A DNA stretch of 64,000 nucleotides from Macrostomum lignano (lineage: Eukaryota): NCBI GenBank assembly GCA_002269645.1, contig NIVC01003019.1:1-64000 (forward strand), read 5' to 3'. How positions within the stretch are numbered: the first letter of the stretch is position 1; each line of letters opens with the position of its first letter. The position numbers were made by a program, and so were the translations under genes. The notes under the pieces were generated by a model, which did no database searches, was not told the DNA's origin, and saw nothing but the letters and a program-made list of their open reading frames with translations. This document shows, piece after piece, positions 1 to 64,000 of this stretch.

Positions 1-415
1 TGTACACGAATCATTGGCATTCGGTAAGCCTTTTTCTTCATATTGCTTTAAACCAGTTGCATATTTTCTATGCAATACTTTATTTCTGTTGTAGAGTGAG
101 CAGGATTGCTGATCTAGAGGCTGCTGGGTACAACCTGGCTGACATCATGTCGATAACCGGTCAGGTTTCTGAAGGACAACTCGCCGTTACCTGTCCAAGC
201 GCCGTGATCGCTCGCTGCAGTCTACCAGTGAGGCTGTTTCTATGGCACTTGATTTGAATGGTTCTTCACAAGCTGTTGCGACTCCATTGCGTGAGAGTTC
301 ACCGGTGCCAGTACCTGTGTCGTCTTCCGTGCAGATCACCGGCATCAGTCATGACAATCCGTCGGTCAGGTACAGTTTCCACAACTGTTCATTCAATGGT
401 TGCAAATTTGAGTAA
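1..415 (+). pseudogene. Crypton-type tyrosine recombinase (DUF3504-like) 3-prime remnant with intron 24-94
   Basis: YTNH(C)IR | VSRIADLEAAGYNLADIMSITGQ...RRYL...YSFHNCSFNGCKFE*; two 1-nt indels (near 14 and near 175); runs off the window start. Confidence 0.7.
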
Positions 416-736
416 TGGACTCAACCGTCGTATTTTCTGGACTTTCTCCTGCTGTGTGATGAGAACATGACCATAGGTTAGACTTGCACTCAATTGACTA
501 AGCAGTGTTATTGTTGGAACATTTTTTGTTGGACTTCAATAAATATAAGAATTTCACGCTTCGTGTTACTTTTTTCGCCTATGGTATTGTTGTCCAGTCT
601 TGTTATTTTACCTCCAGAAAATGGCCGGTCATTGTCCGGAGGTCATTGCCATGAACAAATATTTCGGGCAATGAAGAGGAAGTCTTGTATAGCTCGATTC
701 TATCACTAATGATTTACTAATTGCTTGCCTATAGGG

Positions 737-2704: not shown

Positions 2705-2958
2705 CATGGCTTGGGTCCGCTCATAAGTTTACGCCCCTTGAAGGCCGACCCCCAGGCACAGTAAAATTATATATACATGCTTAACGATAAATAAAGTTAG
2801 GAGGGCCACAATACACTCCTGTGCGACTCCGGTATGACTGCGTACGTATCCGCGCTTGTGTGCCTGCTTATGCAAATCGACGGAATGGGCAGTAATACCT
2901 CTTGCCGGTTGTGCGACAATATTGCTTAAAGTGCGGCACAACTTGAAGCGACCAAAAA
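2705..2958 (+). mobile_element. SINE family A, diverged copy
   Basis: Shares cgtacgtatcc...gggcagtaat.cctct.gccggttgtg...gcttaaagtgcg with the other copies; boundaries approximate. Confidence 0.65.
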
Positions 2959-5564: not shown

Positions 5565-5759
5565 CACGGCTGCTTACGACTGTTCAGTCCATGGACTGGA
5601 AGGTCGCCACACACACCCTCAATTACCCACTTTACAGCTGGGTGAACTGAAGCAATGCAGAGTCAAAGTGTCTTGCTCAATGACACAAATTGTTCCAGTG
5701 AATCGAACCCCGACCTTTAAGTCGTGAGTCAGACGCTCTAACCATTAGTCTCCAGCTCC
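5565..5759 (-). mobile_element. SINE family B copy (3-prime truncated)
   Basis: Reverse complement shows A-box TAATGGTTAGAGC, B-box GGTTCGATTC and the same central domain. Confidence 0.75.
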
Positions 5760-6769: not shown

Positions 6770-7052
6770 GTAAGGATTTTAGCCTAGTGCTTGAGCGTCT
6801 CAACTGAAATGTAGGCGTCGGTTCGATTCCCGATCCCACTAAAACAATTTGTGTCCTTGGCAAGACACTTAACTCTGCATTGCTTCAGTTCACCCAGCTG
6901 TAAAATGGGTGCCAGCATTAGCTGGGTGATTGAGGGTGTGTGGCAACCCCCCCCCCAGTCCTTGGACTGAACAGCCGTACGCAGCCTTCAGATGCGCCGC
7001 GCAATAGCTGCGACTGAGCTGTCGGTTGCACATCCGCCATTGGGGCAGGTGT
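6770..7052 (+). mobile_element. tRNA-derived SINE, family B, with CORE-like central domain
   Basis: B-box GGTTCGATTCC, then GTGTCCTTGGCAAGACACTTAAC...CAGTTCACCCAGCTGTAAAATGGG; shared with two other copies. Confidence 0.75.
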
Positions 7053-7179
7053 AATCAATAACTGTATGTATGTATACTAGCAATCAGCGCCCCCGTTGGG
7101 GAGCCAACAAAGAATGGAATACATTTTTTGAATGAAGTACATGTAGCTTCTCCTTGCAATAACCTCAGCAATTCCCCTT

Positions 7180-7380
7180 GTAAGAATTGACATCTCGGCG
7201 AATTCCCCCGTAAGCCTTGACAGCTCAGCTATTGTCCCCCGTGGGCCTTGACATCTCAACAATCCCCCTAACCCTAACCCTAACTCTAACCCTAACCCTA
7301 AATCCTTGACATTTCAGCAATTCTCCAAAGAGTCACAGCATTATAGTGATTCACTCCAAGCCTTGACAATTCTCAAATGA
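7180..7380 (-). repeat. (CCCTAA)n tract at 7265-7300 embedded in ~5 copies of ccttgacatctc.gc.attcccc
   Basis: Direct reading. Confidence 0.6.
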
Positions 7381-9369
7381 ATCTTCTATGTTCGACATGA
7401 CGCGCTTCTTTCATGTTTTACGTGACTCTTCTTTCTTTTTGACTTGAAACTGCTTTTATGTTTTACATGACGCATCTTCTATCAGCGCCCCTCGTTAAGC
7501 CTACCTCCGTGTTGCGTTCTATCACAGTGTTTCTGTGCTGCTAGATTTCTCACGGCATGATGAGCAATGACCGGTCAGGCCAACGCTCTGACCTTGATCT
7601 GGTCTGGCCTTGTTTCTGTCAGACCCCAAGACTGTTACTCGATAATTACGAGCGTGACTCTAATGAGTCAAAAACACCCCGTGGCAATCAATATTTCAGG
7701 CAATTAGTAAATAATAAATATTGTACATAAATTTGTGAGCATTGTATGTATATTTTATTTAGATGAAACTATACTCATAGTAATGACAATGTCACAATAG
7801 ACCTTAACAAACAATCAGTGTAGCACTTTGCAAGTGTGTTGAAAATTCGTTAAGCTAAAATGAAACGATAAAACTTGACGGCGCAATTCTTATGCATAAC
7901 AATATGCGCATGGGCCGTTTGAGTGCGTTGTTTGCAGATCGTTCATTTAGCAGGAAAACAAATAAACAAATAAATAGCAAAGCGAGCAAGAATAAACTAA
8001 AGCAAACTTACAAAGAACAAATTAGTAAAACTAGCAAACTGTAAAACAATACAAAAGCCGAGTAAATTATCCTAAAAGTCCATTATAAGTATTTATATAA
8101 AGTTTAGCGTATAATGTTTGCGATACCAGTTATTTTAGAGCAACGGGTACAAAATAACTGTAAGCTAAATTTCATGAATGAGGTCTGAAATTTGCAACCT
8201 ATTTCCGTCTTTCAAACTGTACAGTCGGCTTTTTGCAGGACAACGTTGGTTACAGTTTAAAAAAGTATAATGCAGATAAAATAATTAGTTAAGGTGCTTT
8301 TGCATGCGATTAGATTATTTGCTGGCGCCAGCGAATAAACGTGGAACAGATTTATGCTTTGACATCACAAAGGGCAACAAGGTGTGACATTTATAGATTC
8401 GTTTTTGCAAGCTTAATAGGGAATTTATTGAATTCAAATATCGTCATAAAGTTTGGATACGAGCGTAATATCAAATCCATCTGATTTGATAATCTGATGA
8501 TCACATCGAGCTAATTGGTTATTTTTCACTGTGTCTGCAAGCATTGAGACATTAAGAATCTGAGGTTAATTGCGTAGGTTCAAGAGCATTTTTACACCCA
8601 AGATGCAGAAAAGACAGCTTTTCGAAACCAGCGGAGGCTGCGATTAAATACAGGGAGATCATGCTCAAAATAGTGCGCTCTGCAATGCAAATACTACTCA
8701 TCTCTGTCAGTAGGAAACAAGCGCATTCATACTATTTGTTGACGCAGTAGATAAAATAATTGATTATGCATCGTGACTGAGTGGCGTTAATACCAAAAAA
8801 TTTGCGAAAAGAAAAATCAAACAATTTGCACAGCTAAAATTCAACTTTGCAGCATATTAAAATTTTGATTTTGGGGCGGAACAAATTCTATTAACAGCAG
8901 CACTGAGCACTCCATGTGTATGTGCTTAGAGCAGACTTTTTGAGCAGGTTTAAACGAATTCAGCCGCAGCACACCATGGGATAAGATAAATATAACTTTT
9001 GACAGCTTGTACTCAATCATTCTCAGCATATCTCGCCAATGCGTGCAACCCTTCCGTCTGATTTAGGGCAACAAGACAGTCCTAATCGTGTTTGGTTAGC
9101 CATGCAATTTGTCAGTAAAGTGCAGATCGTGGCTTCAATATTCGCCTTCGTAACTACAACTGTAGATGTATCGATTTGAGTAAATAAACAGTGAGACGGG
9201 TTCTAAAGAGGCCAAGCCTGAAAATAGACCAAATCAGAGCAGAATAAAAAGCCGATAGCTCGATAGACCGCGCCCGACAATCTATAAGAGGAGGAGGAAT
9301 TCCCTTTTCTCTCCTCCTTCTATCTTATTCCGCGGGCAGCGAGTGCATTTGCATATTCGCAATTTGCAA

Positions 9370-9375
9370 TTTATT
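9370..9375 (-). terminator. Candidate polyadenylation signal (AATAAA) of the active-zone gene
   Basis: tttatt on the plus strand, ~277 nt past the stop codon; motif only. Confidence 0.3.
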
Positions 9376-9651
9376 GGACCGAAACTGTCTCAGAGAGGTC
9401 TGAATCTCCTAGAGCTCTGGCAGCGAATTAATCAGCCAAAGAGATAGAGATAGACAGTAGAGAGAGAGAGAGAGAGAGAAGAAATGGCTTCGTTGGCTTG
9501 AGGGAGGCCACCATGGCCTCTAGATTCTGCAAGCCTCTTTTCCACTTTCATACTTTCTCTCACACGCATCCTCTTTCGCTTCCCTGGAGGCAAAGGCCGT
9601 CAGATTGAGGCCGAGTACGCAGCCCAGTGCAATTTCGGGGCTAAGTTAACT

Positions 9652-46878
<37,227 letters not shown>

Positions 46879-47119: not shown

Positions 47120-47955
47120 GACAGAGTATTTATCTGTTAGACAGGGGTTTCTACCATGTTAGAGACTAGAAACACTTGGTGTTTACCTGTTAGACAGAAG
47201 TGTTTATTATTTACGTGTTAGACAGTGGGTATTCATCTGTTAGACAGGGACTATTTACGTGTTAGACAGTGGGTATTTACCTGTTAGACAGGGAGTATTT
47301 ATCTGTTAGACAGGGACTATTTACGTGTTAGACAGTGGGTATTTACCTGTTAGACAGGGAGTATTTACCTGTTAGACAGGGAGTATTTACCTGTTAGACA
47401 GGGAGTATTTACCTGTTAGACAGGGAGTATTTACCTGTTAGACAGGGAGTATTTACCTGTTAGACAGGGACTATTTACGTGTTAGACAGTGGGTATTTAC
47501 CTGTTAGACAGGGAGTATTTACCTGTTAGACAGGGAGTATTTACCTGTTAGACAGGGAGTATTAACCTGTTAGACAGGGAGTAGTTACCTGTTAGACAGG
47601 GAGTAGTTACCTGTTAGACAGGGAGTATTTACCTGTTAGACAGGGAGTACGAGCTATTTACGTGTTAGACAGGGAGTATTTACCTGTTAGACAGGGAGTA
47701 TTTACGTGTTAGACAGGGAGTATTTACCTGTTAGACAGGGAGTATTTACGTGTTAGACAGGGAGTATTTACCTGTTAGACAGGGAGTATTTACCTGTTAG
47801 ACTGGGAGTATTTACCTGTTAGACAGGGAGTATTTACCTGTTAGACAGGGAGTATTTACCTGTTAGACAGGGAGTATTTACGTGTTAGACAGGGAGTATT
47901 TACCTGTTAGACAGGGGGTATTTACGTGTTAGACAGGGGGTATTTACCTGTTAGA
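47120..47955 (+). repeat. 22-bp minisatellite tatttacctgttagacagggag
   Basis: Direct reading. Confidence 0.92.
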
Positions 47956-48496
47956 GAGACAGACAGACAAGAAGTGCAGCCAAGACAACAAGTAGAAGAA
48001 ATTGGCGCAGAAATATGGTTAGAAAATCTCTCTTTAAATAGGACAGAATGGGGGTGAGTAGAACTTCCGCTCCTGAAGTTTGGCCAGCGGTACTACACTG
48101 CTTTTTGCGCCAAGAGAATAAAAGCAAGAGACAATGCGCCTCTTTCTTCAACTATCCGCAATCTTGACTGCATGGCCATGCTCTTCTGACAAGGCGCAGA
48201 GAACCTGACCCTAAACAAATCTTCCGTAATCTCCAAACGCCAGCTTTGCTCCAAATATGACTGTTTGTGGGCGTCAGCTCTTTTTCTCTGCGGACAAAAT
48301 ATTTTTCGTTCAGCTCAGTGAAAATAGGAAAAGTGCAGCAGGCTGATTCGCATTGATTTAGACTGCTTCAAACGGTGCACATGGTGCTTAGTTTGCCTTA
48401 TTAAAAGTTGTACTTGTAGTCTGTAGTGCTGCCAAAAAATTATATTCTAAATTATGCACATGGAACAGAAGTTTCTTGACGTCTAATTGGATTGTA

Positions 48497-49202
48497 GCTT
48501 CCCTCGGCTAGATAAAGCTTCCCTCAGATAGATAAAGCTTCCCTCAGATAGATAAAGCTTCCCTCAGATAGATAAAGCTTCCCTCAGATAGATAAAGCTT
48601 CCCTCAGATAGATAAAGCTTCCCTCAGATAGATAAAGCTTCCCTCAGATAGATAAAGCTTCCCTCAGATGGATAAAGCTTCCCTCAGATAGATAAAGCTT
48701 CCCTCAGATAGATAAAGCTTCCCTCGGCTAGATAAAGCTTCCTTCGGATAGATAAAGCTTCCCTCGGCTAGATAAAGCTTCCCTCAGATAGATAAAGCTT
48801 CCCTTGGCTAGATAAAGCTTCCCTCGGGTAGATAAAGCTTCCCTCGGGTAGATAAAGCTTCCCTCAGCTAGATAAAGCTTCCCTCAGCTAGATAAAGCTT
48901 CCCTCGGCTAGGTAAAGCTTCCCTTAATTATGCTAAGCTTCCCTCAGATAGATAAAGCTTCCCTCAGATAGATAAAGCTTCCCTCGGCTAGATAAAGCTT
49001 CCTTCGGATAGATAAAGCTTCCCTCGGCTAGATAAAGCTTCCCTCAGATAGATAAAGCTTCCCTTGGCTAGATAAAGCTTCCCTCGGGTAGATAAAGCTT
49101 CCCTCGGGTAGATAAAGCTTCCCTCAGCTAGATAAAGCTTCCCTCAGCTAGATAAAGCTTCCCTCGGCTAGGTAAAGCTTCCCTTAATTATGCTAAGCTT
49201 CC
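48497..49202 (+). repeat. 20-bp minisatellite agataaagcttccctcagat with a 260-bp higher-order duplication
   Basis: The variant unit cccttaattatgctaagctt recurs at 48921 and 49181. Confidence 0.92.
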
Positions 49203-49611
49203 GTAAAATGTACCAGCATCAGTAGCTTAACTGATTAATACCACCGTGTCTTATGAAGCAGTTTCTTCAACTTCTTCCTTAAGCCCTATTATTTATCAAA
49301 GATATGAAGGCTACAGAGCAAAGAAGAGAACTTCACACAGCAAACAGACGCTGAGGCAAAAGTAAACTTCTCAAAGAATTTACAGCCCCAGTAGGAAGGT
49401 AAAATCCACGAATCGATCTGGGACAAAAACAATAAATCCCTGCAGGTTGCATACTAAGCTGAGGCTCCTCGGCACTCATGGGCAGGAAGTAGGTTATCGA
49501 AAAACTTGCGCGTGACTTTTTTGAACTTTTTTCCGCACCCATTGTAACTCAATTTTGTCCAAATTTCAGATTTTTGATTGAGACTCTTCAAAATTTTAGA
49601 GATTCTTTAGA

Positions 49612-50290
49612 TTCATGAGATAGGGCAGCTTCATGAGATAGGGGAGATTCATGAGATGGGGGATATTCATGAGATAGGGGAGATTCATGAGATAGGGGAG
49701 ATTCATGAGATAGGGGAGATTCATGAGATAGGGGAAATTCATGAGATAGGGGAGATTCATGAGATAGGGGAGATTCATGAGATAGGGAAGCTTCATAAGA
49801 TAGGGGAGATTCATGAGATAGGGGAGCTTCATGAGATAGGGGAGATTCATGAGATAGGGGAGATTCATGAGATAGGGGAGATTCATGAGATAGGGGACAT
49901 TCATGAGATAGGGGAGCTTCATGAGATAGGGGACATTCATGAGATAGGGGGGATTCATGAGATAGGGGAGATTCATGAGATAGGGGAGATTCATGAGATA
50001 GGGGAGATTCATGAGATAGGGGAGATTCATGAGATGGGGGATATTCATGAGATAGGGGAGCTTCATGAGATAGGGGACATTCATGAGATAGGGGAGATTC
50101 ATGAGATAGGGGAGATTCATGAGATAGGGGAGATTCATGAGATAGGGGACATTCATGAGATAGGGGAGATTCATGAGATAGGGGAGATTCATGAGATAGG
50201 GGAGATTCATGAGATGGGGGACATTCATGAGATAGGGGAGATTCATGAGATTCATGAGATTTGTGAGATTCGTGAGATTCATGAGATTGA
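49612..50290 (+). repeat. 18-bp minisatellite ttcatgagataggggaga
   Basis: Direct reading. Confidence 0.92.
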
Positions 50291-50565
50291 GAATAAAAAA
50301 TATCGGAGCTTTATTGGAAATGGGCAGCAGTGGCAAGGAGACTCGATCCAAGTGAAGAGTAAATGACTGACAAGCGCCATGCAGTGTAAAGGACAAATGC
50401 AGTCAATACTGCTGTTGTGGAAGTGATGGAAATTCACTTGCTGCATAGGAGAAGGCGGACGGCGTCAGAGTTGGGATAAAGAACTCAATCAGTTGGGTTT
50501 CCGCTAGAGGCAAAGTAATTAACTGGGACAGTGAGATGCTGGATGGCGGATGCAGCGTTTGCTAA

Positions 50566-51637
<1,072 letters not shown>

Positions 51638-52409: not shown

Positions 52410-53100
52410 TATCGATCACAGATCACAGAATCGGAGTTAAGGAGGGCGATGACCGATCACAGAATCGGAGTTAAGGAGGGCGATGACAGAATCGATGAGG
52501 TGGAGGGCGATGACCGATCATAGAATCGGTGAGGTGAAGGGCGATGACCGATCATATAATCGATGAAGTGGAGGGCGATGACCGATCATAGAATCGTTGA
52601 GGTGAAAGGCGATGACCGATCATATAATCGATGAGGTGGAGGGCGATGACCGATCGCAGAATCGGAGTCGAGGAGGGCGATGACCGATCACAGAATCGAA
52701 GCGAAGGAGGGCGATGACCGATCACAGAATCGGAGCGAAGGAGGGCGATGACCGATCACAGAATCGGAGCGAAGGAGGGCGATGACCGATCATAGAATCG
52801 GAGTTAAGGAGAACGATGACCGATCATAGAATCGGAGTCAAGGAGGGCGATGACCGATCATAGAATCGGAGTCAAGGAGGGCGATGACCGATCACAGAAT
52901 CGGAGCGAAGGAGGGCGATGACCGATCACAGAATCGGAGCGAAGGAGGGCGATGACCGATCACAGAATCGGAGCGAAGGAGGGCGATGACCGATCACAGA
53001 ATTGGAGCGAAGGGGGGCGATGATCGATCATAGAATCGGAGTTGAGGGGGGCGATGATCGATCATAGAATCGGAGCTGAGGGGGGCGATGACCGATCACA
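52410..53100 (+). repeat. 34-bp minisatellite gatgaccgatcacagaatcggagcgaaggagggc
   Basis: Direct reading; about 20 copies. Confidence 0.92.
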
Positions 53101-54807
53101 GGTATCTTTTAAATGTCTAATTGAGTCAAACAGGTGCAGAGATCTCACCTTTGTTAACAGCCGGTTAAGAATTTGGACAAAAGCTAATTAGGAGCAATAT
53201 TTTAAATTAGTTGACGAGTCGATAAAAAATCTGACGCATGTTGCGTTAAATTTTTCGGTTGAGCAAAGCTAAACCAGAAGCCGCTGTCTGTGACCCGTTC
53301 TGCAATTTTATAGCCAAATAGGCGGTGGATAACAATTTTTTTGGCAGGAGTGGCGTGGAACAGCAGAAACCCATCTCTATCCGGCTTTGAGAAGGGCAGG
53401 GATGGCGGAGGGAGACGGCTGAGAGGGTGAAGGGTTGACTGAAGGGGGGCGAGGTGGGGGGGGGGGCTCTGACCCCGCACTAGCGGGCTGGGGGGAATCC
53501 GCATCTTCTCAAACACCCCACGAAAGTCGCGAATCAGACTCAGCTCCGCCTACCCCATCCTCTCTTCTCTCCTGGCTCTTCTGTCGTCTGCTTTTCCTTC
53601 CCCCCTCTGCGCCGGCTTTTCCCGGCTTCAACTGGAAACTGGGAGGCGGGCAGGGGGAGACAGCATTGCCAGCATCCAGCTCTTCCATAGGGAGCTGTAC
53701 TCAACCTCCCGGTCGGACATGAAGCTTCATTCTCTTTGCACTCTTGACTCTCCCCATGCTCTGTCCCGGGTTTCTCTTGCCCTATCCTGCACCCCCCCCC
53801 CAGTGCACTCGGGTGGCGAACGAGCTTTCTCGCGCCTGCTCAATTAAGAAACTCAGACAGAATTTCGTTCTGTACGCTTTCACCCCAGCGTCCAGCTATT
53901 TCAGTGGCACACTTTTGCGTGCAAGGAGAATATCGCCGCTTAGGGGGGGGGGATAAATTTAGAAATCCCCTCAGTCCAAACTCTCCCTCTAACCACCAGC
54001 CAGCTCGAAATGAGCGCCTCACGATGGCCCCGAGCGCATCTCCTGATCGCCACCCCGCCCACCAGCAAAGTGTAACTATTACTCCGAGGCCGAGTGCAGA
54101 TGGACAGATACCCCCTCCTGAGACAGCCAGAGTCCTGCACCACCCACTCCGAATTGGCGATCCCAATAAAGCCGGCTAAAATCCCCAACCCGCACCTCGA
54201 GAGCCACCCAGTATTCGAGAGCTATGACTATAAATACTCGGACAGAATTCCTTCTGCATCCCTATTTTTTGCTCGATTGCTGAGACTGGCCCCAGCTGGG
54301 AGATATTAGCCCGGGGGCAAACCGCCACAGAGAGTGCACACATTCCTGCGGCGACAAATGGGCAGAATTGTCGTCAGCTCTGGTTGTGATACGATGTCTT
54401 CCAAAGGTTGCTTGCAGCTGCACAGAGATGCCAGAGCCAAATTTGCTGTACAAAACGGGAGATGATTGCATGGCTTCAGTGCACCTTCCAAACTATCGTT
54501 CCCAGCAGACAGGCAGCTATCAATTATTTTCTCTCACTCCACTTGAGATCTACAACAGACAAATGACAAAAGTGACGATATAAAAAAGCGTTTGCTATTT
54601 TTAAAAATGAAACTGCTTATCAAACAATTTGAAAGGATCAATTTAAAAAAATGCTTCAACTCGCGCGCCAACATGGGATTGTGTTTCTGTACGAGCTACT
54701 TGAAGTAGCCTGACTATAGGTCAACAACTAAAATACGGTCGATGTGAACGTTCGAAGCTACTACATGAACTGTGACGAAAATAATATAATAGTAATAATT
54801 GATTAAA

Positions 54808-55082: not shown

Positions 55083-56414
55083 CCGTAGTGACCAATGAAT
55101 TTTTTATAGTTTCGACTTGAGAAGCCAGTCTTGACTTTGGAGTTGACTTTGAGACGTAACTTTACCCCCCCTGAAAGACGTATATGGGGAATTCCTTTAA
55201 AATATGACCTTTACCTTGACCGTGAACATAAAGGATAAAATAGTATAGCTTCTTCCTCTTTGTCATGGCTAGATGTGTGCGTATCGATTTAAAGACTATC
55301 TATGTAGACCAAAATAACTTGTCCAGACTATCCAGTGTTGGTGTGCATATGGCCCTATATCTATTCGTACATGCCTTCTCGTTAAAACACTTCCTAATGC
55401 TAAGAGGATTAATTATTCGAAAGATTCTTCACAATACGCTCGTTCGATTGGCGATCAAAGCATTCCGAAAAAAACTTGAGTGGTCATAGGTCAGTTGATC
55501 TCAAATCAACTCCGCCTCTGGCTACGGCTACTGCATCGTGTCCGAAGGAAGAACCGTGGCGACCTTCTCCCAGCACACCGGAACCTGCTCTACCGTTGTC
55601 CAGAACGAACTTCTCGCCATCAGCTGCTGTCACCACTCGGATCAACCAGTGGGTGGCTTCAAAGCACAGGGAGAGGTGGGCTAACGCCCCCGACTGCCGG
55701 CAATCCCGCGCGGCTGCCCCCTGTCTTTGACCCGCCCTCCGCAGGGCCCTGCATGCTTGGACTCAACCTCAGGGACATCAGGGCGGTGACCATGGCTCTC
55801 TCGGGTCGTGGCTGTTTTGCCAGGCATCGCCACTTCCGGGGAAAATCCATAGTGAGAAATGCCCATGCTGCCTCTTCGGTGTTGAGCATGCGGAGCACTT
55901 CATTTGTGAATGCTTCACCTTTACTCAGGACAGGCTCACCTACCTCGGACAAAACCCTGGACGCTTCCAGGCCCGAGAGTTTCGATCTCTGCCAGCTCGT
56001 CCGCTACCTAAGGACGAGCGACCATCCACCTCCTGGACTCTTCAGAGGGGGACCGCGCTGCGGACACCGGCACCACTGGATCTCCCTGCACGACACCGCA
56101 GCACCAGCTGCCCGTGGTCGCCAGGGGTTAGCTAGAGCGACGAGATCTCTACAATCGTAGAGATTACAAGGCTCTGTAATGTCCGGGTAAATCTCAGCAG
56201 AAAAGACGTGCGGGCCATCACCATGACCTTCACGGTGCTACGCCAAGCATTGTTTTTTCCGCCTAGACATTAAAAATAACAAGCATTTTGTCTGCCAATT
56301 TCCAGTCTTTAACAAGGATCGACTGCAATACCTTGGGCCAAAGCCATGCTTGGGAATACGTCCATGAAATAGGTCTTAGTGTCTGTCTGTGCTAATGGCC
56401 TTCCGTTTTAGTAC

Positions 56415-56815
56415 CTGTCAGTGCTAGTGCCTTTCCATCTTAGTATCCGTCTGTGCTAGTGCAATTCCATCTTATTATCCATCTGTGCTAGTGCAATTCC
56501 ATCTTAGTATCCGTCTGTGCTAGTGCAATTCCATCTTAGTATCCGTCTGTGCTAGTGCAATTCCATTTTAGTATCCATCTGTGCTAGTGCTATTCCATCT
56601 TAGTATCCATCTGTGCTAGTGCCCTTCCATCTTAGTATCCGTCTGTGCTAGTGCAATTCCATCTTAGTATCCGTCTGTGCTAGTGCTATTCCATCTTAGT
56701 ATCCGTCTGTGCTAGTGCAATTCCATTTTAGTATCCGTCTGTGCTAGTGCCCTTTCATCTTAGTATCCGTCTGTGCTAGTGCTATTCCATCTTAGTATCC
56801 GTCTAAGTATCTTAG
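56415..56815 (+). repeat. 32-bp minisatellite tccatcttagtatccgtctgtgctagtgcaat
   Basis: Direct reading. Confidence 0.9.
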
Positions 56816-57000
56816 TATCCGAAACAATAACTCTTTAAATAATCTGAATGACTCTTTCACCCGGATGGTAAAAGCTGACTTTACAGCTGCGGTGCCACGA
56901 CAGTATATTTTTTCGTTTGAAATCGAATGGTTCAATCTTTAGCTTATCTTTAAATCAGCTTTAGTTTGTGTTAAAGAATAGCAACTCGACTTGTTGCAAG

Positions 57001-57872
57001 TTAGTAACGATAGGGGCCATTGTACCTGGCCGTCGACCGGAAACGCATGGCGGAGCCGAGGTAGCGCTTGCCCTGCCGCTGGTACCAGTTCGGCCAGGAG
57101 TACCGCCACCGACGTTCGCCTCCAAAACGAACGGCGGCGCCAAGATGTCTTTTAACCAGCTGTTCAGCAGAATCCTCCAAATCGTTGTTAGCGTCTTGGT
57201 CAATGTTGTGCGCAACACCTGTATCGAAGTACCAGTCAGCAAGGTAAGGCAGATTGTAGCTTCGCTTGTAATTAGGCACGCTCCAACGCCAGGGCGTGCC
57301 GACGTGACGCTTGAAACGGAGTCTCATAGCAGAGCCCATGTTCTTCTTGCTTCGGAGTCTCATCGCAGAGCCCATGTTCTTCTTGCTTCGGAGTCTCATA
57401 GCCGAGCCTAAGTACTTCTTGCCTCGAAGTCTCATGGCAGAAGCCATGCTCTTTTTGCCTCGAAATCTCATGGCAGAGCCCATGTTCTTCTTGCCTCGAA
57501 ATCTCATGGCAGAACCCATGTTCTTCTTGCTTCGGAGTCTCGTGGCAGAACCCATGTTCTTCTTGCTTCGGAGTCTCATGGCAGAACCCATGTTCTTCTT
57601 GCTTCGGAGTCTCATAGCAGCGCCCAAGTACCGTTTCACCTGCTCAATTCGATTTATCAGGTCGCTTGAAGCGCTTTGAGAAAATTCCTGCAGCGTTGGC
57701 TCATTGTCAATCGAATTGGCGCTCTGAAATCAATTGATTAGCGATGCAGATTGAGTGAGGGCTAGTTTGAAATGATTAAAAATATAGGTGCAACTCGGTA
57801 AGTAGGACTCACCTCGGCGATCACGGCAAGTGCGCTGCACAGAAGCAACATCAGTAGAGCTGCCCGGGTCAT
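57001..57872 (-). CDS. Neuropeptide precursor (260 aa), exons 57872-57813 and 57723-57001
   Basis: Signal peptide MTRAALLMLLLCSALAVIAE (not in the ORF track); 89-nt GT-AG intron in phase 0; repeated peptides separated by KK/KR; several G-KK/G-KR amidation signals. Confidence 0.9.
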
Positions 57873-58796
57873 TTCTCAGTAAGGTGGAGTTTTGCGAGGC
57901 CTGAAATGTTGGAGATAAAACAGTAGCGACTTCGCTAAAAATTTCTGTCACGTCTGATCAAGCTGTCTGATTTTGAGCTGAATAAATTAGACAAATTTTA
58001 CAGCTTCATAACAAGCTGAGTGAAACGTTTTCTTTCCTAGAAATGATTTGTTTTCAAAATCAGGCATCACGCAAAGCAGTAGAGGTCTTGAGCAGCTTTG
58101 CGAGTCCACAGCAGCATTCCGATGCCAAATTTGAATTTGAGAAGCTCTCGCGGAGACCGCTAGGATTACCCAGAGCGATTGCACAAGACATTTGCTTAAT
58201 CTCAATCCCTGTTAATTCTGCTCGGGTAGCACAAGCTGTCAGCGGATTTGTGCATAATCTAAAATATGCTTCATCACGTAATTACTGCAAGCCTAATGGA
58301 GCCCAACAACCAAATGGCTATAAATCCGCTCTACGAGTATGCTTGAGTCTCGCTTAGCGAGTTCATTGAGTAAGCAGTCTGGCTGAGTTACAGACAGCCA
58401 CCTGCAGCCTGTAGTTGCTACGCTAGACTTACTCAGTAGGCGAATGAAGTTCTGCAGCCTTGATCGAGTCTGTGTTTGAAATCTGTCTTTATTCAATGAG
58501 CAGAAAAAATTCTATGTCGAATTCTAGGGGGAACGGAGGCGAAGTTCAAGTGGAGAGGGAACGCGAAAGATTTTCGTCGCTTTTATTTTTCACTACTCGA
58601 AACTGAGACTACTGAGAAAACTGGATGGGCTGAGACCGTCAGGTACAACCAATGAGAACGCGTCTTGGTGAGAATGAAGCTCAGTACAAGCTCAGAAAAT
58701 GCTGCACCGAAAAATCCTCATTGGTCATTTCAGGGAGTCGAATTTAAAAAAGTTTGAGCTCAGGTTCGAGAATAGAGTTCAGTTTCAGATTCGAGT

Positions 58797-59115
58797 TCGG
58801 GTAGGGCTTAGGTTCGGTATTTGAGTAGGGTTTAGGTTCGGTATTTGAGTAGGGTTTAGGTTCGGTATTTGAGTAGGGTTTAGGTTCGGTATTTGAGTAG
58901 GGTTTAGGTTCGGTATTTGAGTAGGGTTTAGGTTCGGTATTTGAGTAGGGCTTAGGTTCGGTATTTGAGTAGGGTTTAGGTTCGGTATTTGAGTAGGGTT
59001 TAGGTTCGGATTTCGGGTAGGGTTTAGGTTCGGGATTCGGGTAGGGTTTAGGTTCGGGTTTCGGGTAGGGTTAAGGTTCGGGATTTGGGTAGGGTTTAGG
59101 TTCTGGATTGGAGTA
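58797..59115 (+). repeat. 24-bp minisatellite gtagggtttaggttcggtatttga (telomere-like hexamer substructure)
   Basis: Direct reading. Confidence 0.88.
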
Positions 59116-59509
59116 GAGTTTCGGATTCGAGTTTAGACTCAAGCTTCGAGCTTCTAGTTCAGGTTTAACGATTTTCAATTCGAAGTTTAGAGAGCCGCTA
59201 TGAAAATTTCGGAAGAAAAGTGCATTCAGAAATTTTTTCTGGTCCGATTTGTTCTATTTCTTGGAATGAGATACTCCCCTCATCCCATTCTCAACATGGA
59301 GAGGCGCGATAATAATCAGTTTGCTGTGAGTCCGTGAACGAGTAGGTTAATCCCAAGAGAAAGGCAGTCGTCTTCTGCGGGGGGAGAGGGCAATCTGTTC
59401 TTGGGGAAGGCAATGCTTCGAGCGTCCTTGGCTATTTTATCTCAGACTCTGCTAGAGCGAAAGAGATCTTCAGGGCGCTCTCTGAAAGAAGCAACGATAT
59501 TGCGGACAT

Positions 59510-60060
59510 GTAGTCTGACCAACATTGTGTCGACTCGCTAATATTTGTGTCAGTAGTCTGACCGACATTGTGCCAGACTGGCTAATATTTGTGTCAGTAG
59601 TTTGACCAAAATTGTGTCAGACTGGCTAATATTTGTGTCAGTAGTTTGACCGACATTGTGTGAGCTTCGCTAATATTTGTGTCATTAGTTTGACCAAAAT
59701 TGTGTCAGACTGGCTAATATTTGTGCCAGTAGTTTGACCAAAATTGTGTCAGACTGGCTAATATTTGTGTCAGTAGTTTGACCAAAATTGTGTCAGACTG
59801 GCTAATATTTGTGTCAGTAGTTTGACCGACATTGTGTGAGCTTCGCTAATATTTGTGTCAGTAGTTTGACCAAAATTGTGTCAGACTGGCTAATATTTGT
59901 GTCAGTAGTTTGACCAAAATTGTGTCAGACTGGCTAATATTTGTGTCAGTAGTTTGACCGACATTGTGTCAGACTGGCTAATATTTGTGTCAGTAGTTTG
60001 ACCGACATTGTGTCAGATTGGCTAATATTTGTGTCAGTTAACTAGCTGATATTGTGTCAG
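59510..60060 (+). repeat. 44-bp minisatellite ttgtgtcagactggctaatatttgtgtcagtagtttgaccaaaa
   Basis: Direct reading; internal ttgtgtcag duplication. Confidence 0.9.
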
Positions 60061-60442
60061 GTTACTAGTCTTGGAAAAGCGCAAAACCAAAGGAACAATA
60101 TAAAATTTTCCAAATCAAAAATATAAAAACATTTTTTTCAAATTTAGAGGCTGGTTATTCATTGTCACGTATTCTCTGTCTTTTTATTAAAATGAGGGCG
60201 AAAGAGTTAAAATTAGGATATGCATTTATTGGCTCAACCGCAATGCTTCTCGTTGCATCAATTGGCGAATGTGTTAAGGTCGTTGTTAAACTGTTTGTTT
60301 AACGTTTAACTAGGGAGTAGGTCCATTTTGTAAACATTGTGCATTCAAAGCGGAACCAGAATGGATTGCTAATCTATTTCTATCAATCTAGAATCATAAT
60401 GGATTGCTAATCTATTTTACTATTGTATAAACTAATAGGGGG

Positions 60443-60742
60443 GGGGGCGTAGCCCAGCGGTGGCGCAGCTGCTCTGGTGTGCCAGCGACCCAGGCTCGAT
60501 TCCAAGTGCAGTCACGGGGCTGAATTGGAATCTCGGCTTGGCTCTGCTCGTGCAATTAACGGCCTTGAGGGCCAACCCCCCAAGGCGCAGTGAAGTGTAC
60601 ATGCCTAACGATAATATAAAGTTAGGGCCGCTGTACACTCCTGTGTGAGTGTGTGCCTGCGTACGTATCCGAGCGCTTGTATGCCTGCTCAGGGGAGTCG
60701 GCGGAATGGGCAGTAATGCCTCTCGCCGGTTGTGTGCCAATG
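60443..60742 (+). mobile_element. SINE family A, 5-prime part (interrupted)
   Basis: Same head and body as 24965-24660 in the opposite orientation. Confidence 0.8.
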
Positions 60743-62003
60743 GTATATTCTTCTGCAGTCGGGATGCATGATATCGGTATAACACGCGAGCGCCGGTAGG
60801 CGCGAGTCGTGTTATTCCAATATCATGCATCCCGACTGCAGAAAAGTGCATTGACTAGTGTTTCCAAATAGGCTAGTTGTTTATGATCGAGAAAGACAAC
60901 GCAGTCTCAGTAGAATCTGTCTAGTTCAATTTTGTTATGTCATTTATCTCTCTCCCTCGCTGCCTTCTGATTGGCTCTCAGTTCTCGCCTCTTTCCTCGG
61001 TTGCGGACTCCACCCCACCCCCTGTCTTATCTTACACCCCCTCCAGTATATTTGAATAAATATACCCGTTTAGGCCCTGCGCTTCGCTATCGTTTTTTTC
61101 CGAAGCCTCTCCAAGGCCAATCTTTAAAACCGTACCGTTTCTCCGAGAAGACCGCTCGAGGATATCGATTCCTTCAAGAGTTTATGAAGAAACTTAGTGC
61201 GAGGGCCGGTCTAAGCAAGGTCTACACTAATCACTGTATTAGGTAAGTAAATTTCTTTTCCGATATGGTATATAAATAGTATATAAATAGTATATTTATA
61301 AATAATAGTTTTAACTAGTTCATGTAAAATTACTTTCCTTTGATTCTCCCACAGAGTCACTAGAGTGTGCGATCTAGACGCCGCTGGCCATTCGCTGCAA
61401 GACATAATGCTTATTACCGGTCAGAAATGTGAGAAGACGGTCAAAAGGTATTTAACCAGGTGCCGGGACCGCAGTCTGTTCAGGAGTTCCAAGGCAGTGA
61501 ACTGTGCACTAAGCCGGCATATTCCAAGCACAAGCACAATGCCGTCCAATGAGGCGTCTTTCTCTGCTAATGCGAGCGGCTCTATCAGTTCTACTGTCTG
61601 CACGCAAGTGATGACGGATCACCAGTTGCAATGCCACCCCACAATCAATTGACGAGCCGGTTCCTCGGCCAGTTCATATCGAGGCCTGTACGTCCGACCA
61701 AGAATATGCGTGTTTGCATTGACGGCAACAACAATTTTATTAACACTGTGTTTGAGTAGGGCGTATCTATCAAAAATACTAATTCTTCGAGAGAAACTAT
61801 GGCTTTAGACTTTTCCCCCTCATTTTCATGCTATAAGTAGTTGTTGTTTATAATTTACAATTATAAACCGGATAAATAAAAAATTAATCATCTAATAATT
61901 AATTTTTGTGTCATCTAAAAACTCGTTAAACTAATGTTTTTTTCTATGGACAATAGCACGCATCCCGCGTGCGTGTTAATGGGTAGCGAAATGCTTGTCA
62001 ATG
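60738..62003 (+). mobile_element. Crypton-like insertion (1,261 bp) carrying a tyrosine recombinase C-terminal fragment
   Basis: Splits a SINE and has CAATG at both junctions. Coding part ~61020-61242 (PPVYLNKY...FFPKP...FMKKLSARAGLSKVYTNHCIR), intron 61243-61354, then VTRVCDLDAAGHSLQDIMLITGQKCEKTVKRY to 61652. Confidence 0.75.
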
Positions 62004-62057
62004 TCGCTTAAAGTGCGCCAGGGTGCACACAACCCCCTGCCTCTAATAAAAAAATAA
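62004..62057 (+). mobile_element. SINE family A, 3-prime tail of the interrupted copy
   Basis: tcgcttaaagtgcgccagggtgcacacaaccccctgcctctaataaaa continues exactly where the 5-prime part stops, by comparison with the intact copy. Confidence 0.85.
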
Positions 62058-62379
62058 TAAACTAATACTATATTCGTGAACTAGTTACAATTATTAAACA
62101 GTAACTTGCATATTATAAGCACAACAAATTTTTTTTCTCAAATTATATGCAGCCTCTCAAATTTCTTTCTGAAAAATAAAAAAATCTGAGCAAACATCAC
62201 ATAATTATCTTGGCGATGAGTTTTCTTTCCTAAGCTAGTTTGCTATTGAAAGCAAAGAGAAATGTTTGTACGCTCAAGGAAATTTGATATATAGTAGGTC
62301 AAAGTTATTGATAGGACCTAGAATTTCTCTTGTAAAATTGTTGAATACAAACCCTGGTTTGTATTCTGTAAATGTCTCT

Positions 62380-64000
62380 AATTCTGGTGTGTGAATGTCT
62401 CTAATTCTGGTGTGTGAATGTCTCTAATTCTGGTGTGTGAATGTCTCTAATTCGGGTGTGTGACCATCTCTAATTCGGGTGTGTGACCGTCTCTAATTCT
62501 GGTGTGTGAATGTCTCTAATTCTGGTGTGTGAATGTCTCTAATTCGGGTGTGTGACCATCTCTAATTCGGGTGTGTGACCGTCTCTAATTCGGGTGTGTG
62601 AATGTCTCTAATTCGGGTGTGTGACCGTCTCTAATTCTGGTGTGTGACCGTCTCTAATTCGGGTGTGTGAATGTCTCTAATTCGGGTGTGTGACCATCTC
62701 TAATTCGGGTGTGTGACCGTCTCTAATTCGGGTGTGTGAATGTCTCTAATTCTGGTGTGTGAATGTCTCTAATTCAGGTGTGTGAATGTCTCTAATTCGG
62801 GTGTGTGAATGTCTCTAATTCTGGTGTGTGAATGTCTCTAATTCTGGTGTGTGAATGTCTCTAATTCGGGTGTGTGAATGTCTCTAATTCGGGTGTGTGA
62901 ATGTCTCTAATTCTGGTGTGTGAATGTCTCTAATTCTGGTGTGTGAATGTCTCTAATTCTGGTGTGTGAATGTCTCTAATTCTGGTGTGTGAATGTCTCT
63001 AATTCGGGTGTGTGAATGTCTCTAATTCGGGTGTGTGAATGTCTCTAATTCTGGTGTGTGAATGTCTCTAATTCAGGTGTGTGACCGTCTCTAATTCGGG
63101 TGTGTGAATGTCTCTAATTCTGGTGTGTGACCGTCTCTAATTCGGGTGTGTGACCGTCTCTAATTCGGGTGTGTGAATGTCTCTAATTCTGGTGTGTGAA
63201 TGTCTCTAATTCGGGTGTGTGAATGTCTCTAATTCAGGTGTGTGAATGTCTCTAATTCAGGTGTGTGACCGTCTCTAATTCGGGTGTGTGAATGTCTCTA
63301 ATTCTGGTGTGTGACCGTCTCTAATTCTGGTGTGTGAATGTCTCTAATTCTGGTATGTGAATGTCTCTAATTCTGGTGTGTGAATGTCTCTAATTCGGGT
63401 GAGTGAATGTCTCTAATTCTGGTGTGTAAATGTCTCTAATTCTGGTGTGTGAATGTCTCTAATTCTGGTGTGTGAATGTCTCTAATTCGGGTGAGTGAAT
63501 GTCTCTAATTCTGGTGTGTGAATGTCTCTAATTCTGGTGTGTGAATGTCTCTAATTCTGGTGTGTGAATGTCTCTAATTCTGGTGTGTGAATGTCTCTAA
63601 TTCGGGTGTGTGAATGTCTAATTCTGGTGTGTGAATGTCTCTAATTCGGGTGTGTGAATGTCTCTAATTCTGGTGTGTGAATGTCTCTAATTCAGGTGTG
63701 TGACCGTCTCTAATTCGGGTGTGTAAATGTCTCTAATTCGGGTGAGTGAATGTCTCTAATTCTGGTGTGTGAATGTCTCTAATTCGGGTGTGTGAATGTC
63801 TCTAATTCGGGTGTGTGAATGTCTCTAATTCAGGTGTGTGACCGTCTCTAATTCGGGTGTGTGAATGTCTCTAATTCTGGTGTGTGAATGTCTCTAATTC
63901 AGGTGTGTGACCGTCTCTAATTCTGGTGTGTGAATGTCTCTAATTCAGGTGTGTGACCGTCTCTAATTCTGGTGTGTGAATGTCTCTAATTCAGGTGTGT
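62380..64000 (+). repeat. 23-bp satellite gtgtgaatgtctctaattctggt, running off the window end
   Basis: Direct reading; about 70 copies. Confidence 0.95.

What the first reader, a model, noticed from the sequence alone, without database searches (positions are those of the whole stretch)
60738..62003. Tyrosine-recombinase (Crypton-like) element caught inserted inside a SINE, with the empty site present in the same window
Seen: the SINE at 60443 stops at ...GTGTGCCAATG (60742) and resumes at CAATG|TCGCTTAAAG (61999-62003). The uninterrupted copy at 24965-24607 reads GTGTGCCTATGTCGCTTAAAG. So 1,261 bp was inserted with CAATG at both junctions, and the insert encodes the catalytic C-terminal half of a DUF3504-like tyrosine recombinase. 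Known: Cryptons are tyrosine-recombinase DNA transposons with short terminal direct repeats and introns, and their true ends are usually hard to define. Inference: this gives base-exact termini for an internally deleted element that moved after the SINE inserted.
Basis: partly seen in the sequence, partly recalled or inferred. Interest (0 to 1): 0.8.

Follow-up and report, generated by a model that had tools for sequence, protein, structure and literature searches.

The report
Deleted Crypton-like transposon inside a SINE
A 1.26-kb, internally deleted copy of a tyrosine-recombinase (Crypton-type) DNA transposon sits inside a SINE-like repeat of the flatworm Macrostomum lignano with CAATG on both sides; relatives from other loci end at the same bases, and joining the two ends recreates a long palindrome.

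Summary
A SINE-like repeat (60441-60742 and 61999-62051) is split by 1,256 bp, with CAATG at both junctions. Removing the insert and one CAATG restores the repeat.

The host is Macrostomum lignano. The insert carries only the C-terminal ~200 codons, frameshifted, of a ~450-aa tyrosine recombinase. Most sampled relatives of that recombinase's full-length M. lignano homologue match Pfam DUF3504, Phage_integrase and QRICH1, the CryptonA type.

The proposed ends hold up:
- Two close relatives (metagenome contigs L008 and L011) end in ...GCTTGACAATG, and similarity stops exactly there.
- L008, an intact M. lignano element (L005) and a 33%-identical relative (L010) begin YAATG|(G)TATA-like.
- Full units are 1.94-2.02 kb with one ORF and no RT or DDE gene, so about 700 bp is missing here.

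A head-to-tail (circle) junction therefore forms one 130-190-nt palindrome in the window element, L005 and L010.

This fits the known Crypton model, in which a short core is shared by element and target. No other copy of this exact family, no true empty allele and no circle was available. It is a solid new member of a known kind, with moderate interest.

The parts
60441..60742 (+). Left part of the interrupted SINE-like repeat
   Evidence: 94.8% identical over 310 bp to the intact copy 24966-24607.
60738..60742 (+). Left CAATG: the target-side copy of the shared core
   Evidence: The third SINE copy reads CAAT at this position.
60743..60750 (+). 5' terminal octamer GTATATTC of the element
   Evidence: The motif YAATG|(G)TA(T/G)A(T/G)TT is shared with L005, L010 and L008.
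60751..60843 (.). 93-bp palindrome (36-nt arms 94% complementary, extending to ~44 nt with a bulge)
   Evidence: I1.: -44.7 kcal/mol, z = -10.75. L005 (9617-9720) and L010 (18-127) have a palindrome at the same position.
60849..60864 (-). Internal inverted copy (CATTGACTAGTGTTTC) of the 3' terminus, including the core
   Evidence: I4, 13/16; 44/5000 shuffles match as well anywhere in the insert. It lies 106 nt from the 5' end; in L005 the equivalent lies at 109 nt (22/23 match).
60913..60982 (+). Promoter-like 5' UTR stretch with an ATTGG (CCAAT-box-like) motif at 60970-60974
   Evidence: Short colinear matches to the L011 5' UTR (GAAnCTGTCTAnTTC; CGCTGC..CTTCTGATTGG). Promoter function is inferred.
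61047..61242 (+). Remnant of exon 1 (homology from ~61052): ...RFFPKPL...FLQEFMKKLSARAGLSKVYTNHCI(R). About 240-250 N-terminal codons, including Arg-I and Lys, are missing upstream.
   Evidence: tblastn against the L002 protein; alignment A2; hhalign.
61243..61354 (+). Intron (GT...AG, 112 nt) at a position conserved in L002, L007, L008, L011 and window copy 2
61355..61652 (+). Exon 2 up to a premature stop: VTRVCDLDAAGHSLQDIMLITGQKCEKTVKRYLTRCRDRSLF... (catalytic Tyr in KRY)
   Evidence: 65% identical to P0001/L002.
61631..61759 (+). Frameshifted original C-terminus (...KNMRVCIDGNNNFINTVFE*)
   Evidence: Matches the C-termini of L002, L008 and L011 (KKMR.xIDGNxNxIDxxFE*) in another frame.
61956..61972 (.). 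3' subterminal hairpin GCACGC-ATCCC-GCGTGC, inside a diverged copy of the palindrome's right arm (61951-61972 against 60818-60839)
   Evidence: D2, I2. Conserved in L008 and L011.
61988..62003 (+). 3' terminus GAAATGCTTGTCAATG; its last 5 bases (61999-62003) are the right CAATG
   Evidence: Aligns with ...GCGCTTGACAATG (L008) and ...AACGCTTGACAATG (L011). Similarity stops after CAATG.
61999..62051 (+). Right part of the interrupted SINE-like repeat
   Evidence: 98% identical over 52 bp to the intact copy.
24607..24966 (-). Uninterrupted paralogous copy of the SINE-like repeat (reads CTATG at the site)
2708..2938 (+). Third, older copy of the SINE-like repeat (reads CAAT at the site)
1..714 (+). 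Second, diverged pseudogene copy of the same recombinase family (3' part only; cut by the window start)
   Evidence: tblastn; sequence; alignment to L007; homology with M. lignano contig L013 breaks at 714/715.

Best explanation
The 1,256-bp insert is a non-autonomous, internally deleted and decayed copy of a Crypton-type DNA transposon of Macrostomum lignano. Its only gene is a ~450-aa tyrosine recombinase of the DUF3504/QRICH1-domain (CryptonA-like) type.

Inferred mechanism, following the established Crypton model: the element exists transiently as a circle whose head-to-tail junction carries the core YAATG (here ...GCTTGT-CAATG-GTATATTC...). The recombinase exchanges strands between this core and an identical CAATG in the target, here inside a SINE-like repeat. 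The integrated element then has the core on both sides, one copy from the target and one from the element.

This copy lacks the N-terminal half of the enzyme (Arg-I, Lys). It was therefore either mobilised in trans by a full-length relative or deleted after insertion.

In the circle, the 3' terminus, the core, the 5' palindrome and the internal inverted copy of the 3' terminus form one long palindrome. This is probably the cis-acting recombination region. The function is inferred; the structure is shown.
For: Shown:
- Clean interruption with CAATG on both sides; the target's own sequence was CAATG.
- Host is M. lignano (99% protein identity; 98% DNA identity over 13.8 kb).
- The insert fragment belongs to the recombinase family (hhalign prob 99.7%, E = 9.5e-26; 65% identity to P0001).
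- Of 60 relatives of the full-length homologue P0010, 50 hit DUF3504, 47 Phage_integrase and 27 QRICH1.
- Full-length relatives are compact single-ORF units: L005 ~1.96 kb, L008 1.94 kb, L010 2.02 kb.
- The 3' ends of the window element, L008 and L011 align over ~55 nt and diverge immediately after CAATG.
- 5' ends: CAATG|GTATATTC (window), TAATG|GTAGATTA (L005), TAATG|TATAGTTA (L010), CAATG|AATATTTT (L008).
- CAATG is element-borne: its inverted copy CATTG starts the internal repeat at 60849. In L005 the 23-nt 3' terminus matches 22/23 to an internal inverted copy at the same offset.
- Reconstructed junctions fold as continuous hairpins: window -51.5 kcal/mol (z = -12.4), L005 -57.9 (z = -17.6), L010 -70.4 (z = -16.3).

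From the literature:
- An active Crypton (CryptonF-1_cRei) ends in CACCG and targets CAYCG, with clean excisions (PMC9977147).
- Non-autonomous Cryptons exist (PMC3212892).
Against: - No second copy of this exact family from M. lignano could be examined. There is none elsewhere in the window, the exact-protein look-up found nothing, and the metagenome scan returned only two distant loci.
- L008, L011 and L010 come from metagenomes of unknown hosts.
- The nearest full-length relative, L008, has no 5' palindrome.
- In L005 the right junction reads TAAT|T rather than TAATG, so only 4 bases are shared there.
- There is no evidence here for circles, excision or recent activity. The copy is frameshifted and truncated.
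- The 'empty site' is a paralogue.
- Placement among the named Crypton groups rests on Pfam domain hits in relatives, not on a phylogeny with reference Cryptons.
Confidence: 0.8

Rival explanations
1. Same element and same integration mechanism, but a full-length autonomous copy inserted into the SINE and lost ~700 bp of its 5' coding region afterwards, in place. The deleted form never moved.
For: The copy is otherwise decayed (frameshift between 61560 and 61650). No second copy with the same deletion was found. Palindrome-containing DNA is prone to deletion (general knowledge).
Against: Both ends and ~300 bp of 5' and ~245 bp of 3' non-coding sequence are retained, which is the usual pattern of non-autonomous derivatives. 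Non-autonomous Cryptons are known and outnumber their masters. Nothing here decides between the two readings.
Confidence: 0.35
2. CAATG is an ordinary 5-bp target-site duplication made by a DDE transposase (or another staggered-cut enzyme), acting on an element that merely carries a recombinase gene fragment.
For: A 5-bp direct repeat flanks the insert. Subterminal inverted repeats exist (60849-60864 against 61988-62003).
Against: The extreme ends are not inverted repeats: GTATATTCTT... against the reverse complement ACAAGCATTT.... Full-length relatives encode only the recombinase. The same YAATG occurs at the ends of four elements in unrelated flanks, and as an inverted copy inside the element, so it belongs to the element.
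Confidence: 0.04
3. A Helitron or other rolling-circle element captured a recombinase exon, or the insert is a composite of unrelated pieces.
For: There is a hairpin ~27 nt before the 3' end (61956-61972). In one register the insertion falls between A and T.
Against: None of the six possible registers gives a 5' TC or a 3' CTRR end. There is no Rep/helicase. The order 5' palindrome, internal inverted copy, recombinase ORF, 3' end recurs in L005 and L010, so the pieces belong together. The 5' UTR motifs are colinear with L011.
Confidence: 0.02
4. Repair-mediated capture: a fragment of an element (or a broken circle) was pasted into a double-strand break in the SINE by microhomology-mediated end joining, without recombinase action.
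For: A 5-bp microhomology at the junctions is compatible with end joining.
Against: End joining uses microhomology once per junction and does not leave the target intact with a duplicated core. The break points coincide with the ends seen in L008, L011, L005 and L010, which random breakage would not give.
Confidence: 0.04

Closest known systems
Crypton DNA transposons, CryptonA group / DUF3504-type recombinases (Goodwin et al. 2003; Kojima & Jurka 2011, PMC3212892; Glomhoppers, PMC13465315)
   Same: A single gene encodes a tyrosine recombinase and there is no RT. The recombinase has an N-terminal QRICH1-like domain plus a DUF3504/Phage_integrase catalytic domain. There are no inverted repeats at the extreme ends. 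A short direct repeat or microhomology of 4-6 bp flanks the element. Some lineages have introns. Boundaries are otherwise hard to see.
   Different: For animal Cryptons no terminal repeats of any kind were reported, and Glomhopper boundaries could not be defined. Here the ends are defined to within the core. They are accompanied by a ~100-bp subterminal palindrome and an internal inverted copy of the 3' terminus. The two Crypton papers I read for termini do not describe these features, and two of my full-text searches turned up nothing on them. No phylogeny with reference Cryptons was made.
CryptonF-1_cRei of Chlamydomonas reinhardtii (Lopez-Cortegano et al. 2023, PMC9977147)
   Same: A 5-bp core at one terminus (CACCG) is identical or near-identical to the target (CAYCG). 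Excision is clean and leaves one core. This is the same logic as CAATG here.
   Different: It belongs to a different Crypton group (CryptonF, with a GCR1_C domain) and has a different core. Its activity was observed experimentally, whereas here insertion is only inferred from one old copy.
Non-autonomous Cryptons CryptonI-1N1_RPro and CryptonA-1N1_OL (PMC3212892)
   Same: Internally deleted derivatives that keep a few hundred bp of each end of the autonomous element.
   Different: Those are abundant families defined from many copies. Here there is a single copy, and it is not known whether it moved as a deleted form.
DIRS1-type tyrosine-recombinase retrotransposons (inverted terminal repeats plus an internal complementary region)
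   Same: An internal segment is complementary to the joined termini. Here the right palindrome arm plus 60849-64 is complementary to the 3' end plus the 5' end. Both encode a tyrosine recombinase and are presumed to have a circular intermediate.
   Different: DIRS elements encode Gag, RT/RNase H (and methyltransferase) and are ~5 kb. None of that is present in the 1.9-2.0-kb units. The resemblance comes from my own knowledge; it is a lead only.
Folded-DNA substrates of bacterial tyrosine recombinases (integron attC hairpins; CTX-phi attP for XerCD)
   Same: A long imperfect palindrome lies at the recombination site of a tyrosine recombinase, with the crossover placed asymmetrically in one arm.
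   Different: Those act on single-stranded DNA in bacteria. Nothing here shows that the palindrome is extruded or single-stranded. This is recalled from general knowledge and was not tested.

Membership tests
Crypton (tyrosine-recombinase DNA transposon) | Encodes a tyrosine recombinase with the catalytic R...H-x-x-R...Y residues | tested here: met
   The window fragment has NHCIR and KRY. Arg-I (GERGQEH) and Lys (SKN) are present in the full-length relatives P0010, P0007 and P0008 but are deleted from this copy. Phage_integrase scores above Pfam's cut-off for P0012 and P0015 and hits 47/60 relatives.
Crypton (tyrosine-recombinase DNA transposon) | No reverse transcriptase, RNase H or DDE transposase in the unit (separates it from DIRS/Ngaro and from MarCry-type composites) | tested here: met
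   L005, L008 and L010 are 1.94-2.02-kb units with one ORF. An intron inside the insert excludes a processed retrocopy.
Crypton (tyrosine-recombinase DNA transposon) | No terminal inverted or long terminal repeats; a short (4-6 bp) direct repeat shared by one terminus and the target | tested here: met
   CAATG lies on both sides. The extreme ends are not inverted repeats. YAATG occurs at the ends of L008, L010 and L005, with 4 of 5 bases at the L005 right junction.
Crypton (tyrosine-recombinase DNA transposon) | Dispersed multicopy family with uniform ends in one genome | tested here: inconclusive
   M. lignano has at least three diverged lineages (the window insert, window copy 2, L005) plus the UniRef fragments P0013 and P0014. 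No second copy of the insert's own family was retrievable.
Crypton (tyrosine-recombinase DNA transposon) | Excision as a circle and reintegration | not testable with these tools
   This needs junction PCR or circle sequencing. L007 (possibly a permuted contig) and L011 (3' end followed by 5'-like sequence) are only hints.
CryptonA / DUF3504 lineage | Catalytic domain recognisable as DUF3504, N-terminal QRICH1-type domain | tested here: met
   The link is transitive. The window fragment matches the profile of the P0010 family at E = 9.5e-26. In that family 50/60 hit DUF3504 (best 1.5e-29) and 27/60 hit QRICH1. The window fragment itself gives no direct DUF3504 hit.
CryptonA / DUF3504 lineage | Phylogenetic placement with reference CryptonA recombinases | not tested
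DDE 'cut-and-paste' transposon with 5-bp TSD (e.g. Transib-like) | Terminal inverted repeats at the extreme ends and a DDE transposase | tested here: not met
   No TIR at the ends. No DDE gene in the full-length relatives.
Helitron | 5' TC, 3' CTRR preceded by a hairpin, insertion between A and T without duplication, Rep/helicase | tested here: not met
   None of the six registers allowed by the CAATG ambiguity gives TC...CTRR. No Rep/helicase.
DIRS-like retrotransposon | [quoted passage not shown] | tested here: not met
   No RT in the units. Only the 'internal complementary region' idea has a parallel.

The most novel reading that the evidence does not exclude
This clade of animal Crypton-like elements (window insert, L005, L010; recombinases only ~33% identical between the extremes) may use a recombination region not described for Cryptons. 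In the circle junction, the 3' terminus, a YAATG core, a ~100-bp palindrome and an internal inverted copy of the 3' terminus form one 130-190-bp palindrome, with the crossover placed asymmetrically in one arm. If this palindrome is the functional site (for example extruded as a cruciform or hairpin, as with integron attC or CTX-phi attP), it would be a eukaryotic tyrosine-recombinase transposon that recognises a folded or palindromic substrate. It would also give a structural link to the internal complementary region of DIRS retrotransposons.
Probability: 0.35. Interest if true: 0.65.

Novelty: new member of a known kind. Interest (0 to 1): 0.5.

Why it matters
Cryptons are the least understood class of eukaryotic DNA transposons. 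Their ends are notoriously hard to define: for animal Cryptons no terminal features at all had been reported, and the boundaries of the fungal DUF3504-type elements are still undefined (PMC3212892; PMC13465315).

This locus, together with four relatives, gives ends exact to within the core, a conserved YAATG core and a conserved palindromic junction architecture. The family lives in Macrostomum lignano, which I know (from general knowledge, not checked here) as a laboratory flatworm amenable to transgenesis. The circle-junction sequence to look for can be written down directly.

DUF3504 recombinase domains were domesticated into ZMYM2/3/4, QRICH1 and KCTD1. Knowing what DNA the ancestral enzymes recognise is therefore of some wider interest. 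The insertion mechanism itself (a shared 5-bp core) was already shown experimentally for a CryptonF element, so the conceptual gain is incremental.

Tried and rejected
1. Other copies in the window: none for the insert, its palindrome arm or its ends. The second recombinase copy (1-714) is too diverged to align outside coding sequence.
2. Motif CTTGTCWATG as a family signature in the window: 14 hits against 9.4 expected; 3/100 shuffles reach 14. Not significant, so dropped.
The second found only two distant loci, L009 and L010, and did not recover L002 or L008.
4. Exact-protein look-up of the window ORF 61365-61652: not on record.
5. L013 as an empty site for window copy 2: homology breaks at 714/715, but the other side in L013 is a different repeat. 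It is suggestive only.
6. Idea that the 5' UTR is inverted relative to L008 (a G-rich 14-mer matches in reverse): rejected. The informative motifs are colinear with L011, and the 14-mer is low-complexity.
7. Direct Pfam assignment of the window fragment: only Phage_integrase at E = 0.09 and no DUF3504 hit. This was resolved through relatives.
8. PDB sequence search with the family profile: no meaningful hit.
9. tRNA search to validate the SINE head: no call.
10. LTR (TG...CA), non-LTR (poly-A), Helitron and DDE readings of the junction were examined on the sequence and rejected.
11. Structure prediction was not run.
Full report
OBSERVATION. The sequence is as described. A ~360-bp SINE-like repeat has three copies in the window:
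- an intact one at 24966-24607 (minus strand);
- an older one at 2708-2938;
- a split one, 60441-60742 (94.8% identical to the intact copy) and 61999-62051 (98%).

The split copy stops at ...GTGTGCCAATG and resumes at CAATGTCGCTTAAAG. The insert body is therefore 60743-61998 (1,256 bp), with CAATG at 60738-60742 and 61999-62003. The intact copy reads CTATG and the older copy CAAT(A), so the target itself was most likely CAATG. The 'empty site' is a paralogue, not the allelic site. ARAGORN finds no tRNA in the repeat heads, so 'SINE' remains a reasonable label rather than a demonstrated fact.

HOST. Window ORF 3872-4600 (minus) is 99% identical to Macrostomum lignano protein BOX15_Mlig029560g4. 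Contig NIVC01000707.1 (L013) is 98% identical to window 715-14510. The window is therefore M. lignano, a free-living flatworm. It is very rich in satellites and in foldback-type inverted repeats.

ANATOMY OF THE INSERT.
- 60743-60750: GTATATTC.
- 60751-60843: a 93-bp palindrome (DNA fold -44.7 kcal/mol, z = -10.75).
- 60849-60864: CATTGACTAGTGTTTC, the inverted complement (13/16) of the last 16 bases of the insert plus core (61988-62003, GAAATGCTTGTCAATG).
- To 61046: a non-coding stretch with an ATTGG box.
- ~61052-61242: coding sequence (...RFFPKPL...FLQEFMKKLSARAGLSKVYTNHCI-R).
- 61243-61354: a GT...AG intron.
- From 61355: exon 2 (VTRVCDLDAAGHSLQDIMLITGQKCEKTVKRYLTRCRDRSLF...), which runs into a premature stop at 61650-61652.
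- To the stop at 61757-61759: the original C-terminus (KNMRVCIDGNNNFINTVFE*), which survives in another frame.
- 244 bp of A+T-rich 3' UTR, with a small hairpin at 61956-61972.

WHAT THE PROTEIN IS. On its own the fragment gives only a weak Pfam Phage_integrase hit (E = 0.09) and no DUF3504 hit. Its relatives settle the question.
- The closest is a JGI metagenome contig (L002; 65% identity, same intron position). Its upstream exon supplies the missing N-terminal part, including GERGQEH (Arg-I) and SKN (Lys).
- Searching with that composite found full-length proteins, among them the intact, intronless 449-aa M. lignano protein P0010 (BOX15_Mlig009749g2).
- P0010 has 2,201 cluster representatives at E <= 1e-3 in the 1.84-billion-protein library.
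- Of 60 sampled relatives, 50 match DUF3504 (best 1.5e-29), 47 Phage_integrase and 27 QRICH1.
- The window fragment matches the profile of these 60 with probability 99.7%, E = 9.5e-26, over P0010 residues 300-406.

DUF3504 is the Crypton-derived recombinase domain (PMC3212892), and DUF3504-encoding elements are classed as CryptonA (PMC13465315). The insert therefore encodes the HxxR...Y half of a CryptonA-like recombinase, and about 240-250 N-terminal codons (~700 bp) are missing. The Gln in TGQK, where many relatives have TGHK, is shared with L002, P0010, P0008 and window copy 2. It is a lineage trait, not damage.

ARE THE ENDS REAL? No second copy of this exact family was obtainable, so I used relatives.

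3' end. The last ~55 bases align between the window element, L008 and L011, the latter two being contigs from JGI sample 3300040801:
- window ...GTGTTAATGGGTAGCGAAATGCTTGTCAATG|TCGC
- L008 ...ATGGTAATGCTCGGTCTAGCGCTTGACAATG|AAAA
- L011 ...GTGATAATGTAAGCATAACGCTTGACAATG|..., with its last 21 nt duplicated

Similarity ends exactly after CAATG in all three.

5' end.
- window CAATG|GTATATTCTT
- L005 TAATG|GTAGATTAAG
- L010 TAATG|TATAGTTATT
- L008 CAATG|AATATTTTTC

Upstream sequences are unrelated.

L008 is thus a 1,940-bp unit (83-2022) flanked by (A)CAATG(AA). L010 is a 2,024-bp unit (18-2041) flanked by TAATG/CAATG. L005 is a ~1,956-bp unit (9614-11569) with TAATG on the left and TAAT|T on the right. 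Each has a single recombinase ORF and no RT or DDE gene. The register within the core cannot be resolved, and L005 suggests that only YAAT may be obligatory.

A CONSERVED JUNCTION PALINDROME. In L005 a 104-bp palindrome (9617-9720) sits 3 nt inside the 5' end. It is followed at once by 9723-9745, which is 22/23 complementary to the 3' terminus 11547-11569 (0/2000 shuffles). The window element has the same layout. The internal inverted copy lies 106 nt from the 5' end, against 109 nt in L005 (13/16; 44/5000 shuffles for a match anywhere). L010, whose recombinase is only ~33% identical, has it too (palindrome 18-127; 128-165 inverted to 2003-2039).

Joining each element's 3' end to its 5' end gives one continuous hairpin across the join:
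- window: -51.5 kcal/mol, z = -12.4
- L005: -57.9 kcal/mol, z = -17.6
- L010: -70.4 kcal/mol, z = -16.3

This shows two things. The chosen ends are the right ones, because the symmetry is only completed when they are joined. And CAATG is part of the element, because its mirror image CATTG (CATTAT in L005) sits in the other arm. L008 lacks the palindrome. This is unexplained; palindromes are easily lost, and L008 is itself decayed in exon 2.

MECHANISM. What is shown is a precise insertion at a core shared by element and target, in a family whose only gene is a tyrosine recombinase. The rest is inferred from the established Crypton model (Goodwin et al. 2003, as summarised in PMC3212892, and observed for CryptonF-1_cRei, which ends in CACCG, targets CAYCG and excises cleanly, PMC9977147). 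In that model, recombination between the core in a circular form and the same core in the target leaves one core on each side. This copy cannot make an active enzyme. It was either mobilised in trans or deleted after insertion, and I cannot tell which. That the long palindrome is the cis-acting site, possibly as an extruded structure, is a hypothesis only.

RIVALS.
- A DDE element with a 5-bp TSD is rejected. There are no terminal inverted repeats, there is no transposase, and the core is constant and element-borne.
- A Helitron or a composite is rejected. No register gives TC...CTRR, there is no Rep, and the same order of parts recurs in L005 and L010.
- Capture by end joining is unlikely, because the break points coincide with the family's ends.
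- A retrocopy is excluded by the intron.

COMPARISON AND NOVELTY. Crypton-type elements, the shared-core insertion model and non-autonomous Cryptons are all known. However, Kojima & Jurka found no terminal repeats of any kind in animal Cryptons, and the boundaries of the fungal DUF3504 elements could not be defined in 2026. I found no paper on Cryptons in Macrostomum or on palindromic Crypton junctions in the searchable library. I therefore file this as a new member of a known kind. The conserved junction palindrome is a possibly new structural feature that deserves a genome-wide check.

LIMITS. There is one copy of this family. The relatives come partly from metagenomes of unknown origin. No phylogeny with reference Cryptons was made. 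There is no evidence of circles, excision or current activity.

Noticed in passing
window 1-714 (+): A second, diverged pseudogene copy of the same recombinase family, cut by the window start: ...YTNHWHS | intron 24-95 | VSRIADLEAAGYNLADIMSITGQ..., ending ...FHNCSFNGCKFE* at ~415. Its 3' region 612-655 aligns with the end of Logan contig L007. M. lignano contig NIVC01000707.1 (L013) matches the window at 98% from 715 onward but is unrelated to the left, and both read TACTAAT at the break. This may be a presence/absence polymorphism at a YAAT core.
   Followed up: partly
L007 1-1963; L011 1666-1760: L007 (1,963 nt, about one element length) looks circularly permuted: window copy 2 aligns across its end-to-start join, although the extension is weak (14/18). 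In L011 the terminal 21 nt (TAAGCATAACGCTTGACAATG) is tandemly duplicated and is followed by a short palindromic remnant and a third CAATG. Both could reflect head-to-tail or circular forms.
   Followed up: partly
L008 1231-1246 and 2007-2022: The 3'-terminal 16-mer of L008 has a 14/16 inverted match inside its own ORF (1/2000 shuffles), while L008 lacks the 5' palindrome present in the window element, L005 and L010. Unexplained.
   Followed up: no
window 725-1038, 1085-1362, 5625-6910, 13932-14550, 34815-35436: Several foldback or MITE-like long inverted repeats (arms 42-105 nt). Some carry TTGTCTATG-like motifs near or inside their arms, but the motif is not significantly enriched in the window.
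   Followed up: partly
window 25726-26222, 28206-28702, 33333-33911, 36539-37461, 38390-39352, 40023-41568, 42416-43074, 47208-50287, 50565-51637, 52413-53101, 56374-60038, 62367-64000: The window is packed with micro- and minisatellite arrays, for example (TCTG)n, (TCTA)n and 12-44-nt units. The interrupted SINE lies between arrays at 59510-60038 and 62367-64000.
   Followed up: no
window 3872-4600 (-), 15902-17104 (-), 29435-32677 (-): Host coding sequence. The first ORF is 99% identical to M. lignano BOX15_Mlig029560g4. The second is a poly-Q-rich exon ending in a C2-domain-like stretch (...[25 protein letters not shown]), identified by eye and not run through Pfam. The third is a 1,080-aa low-complexity ORF.
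   Followed up: partly
window 43640-45872 vs L013 17612-20330: A ~2.2-kb segment of the window matches the M. lignano contig at 92-95%, at a non-colinear position. It is either a dispersed repeat or a rearrangement between assemblies or haplotypes.
   Followed up: no
L005 10001-11350; L006; L012 compared with window, L002, L007, L008, L011: The intron after ...NHCIR is present in some lineages of the family and absent in others (P0010, P0008 and P0012 are continuous). The family therefore gained or lost an intron while remaining a mobile-element gene.
   Followed up: no
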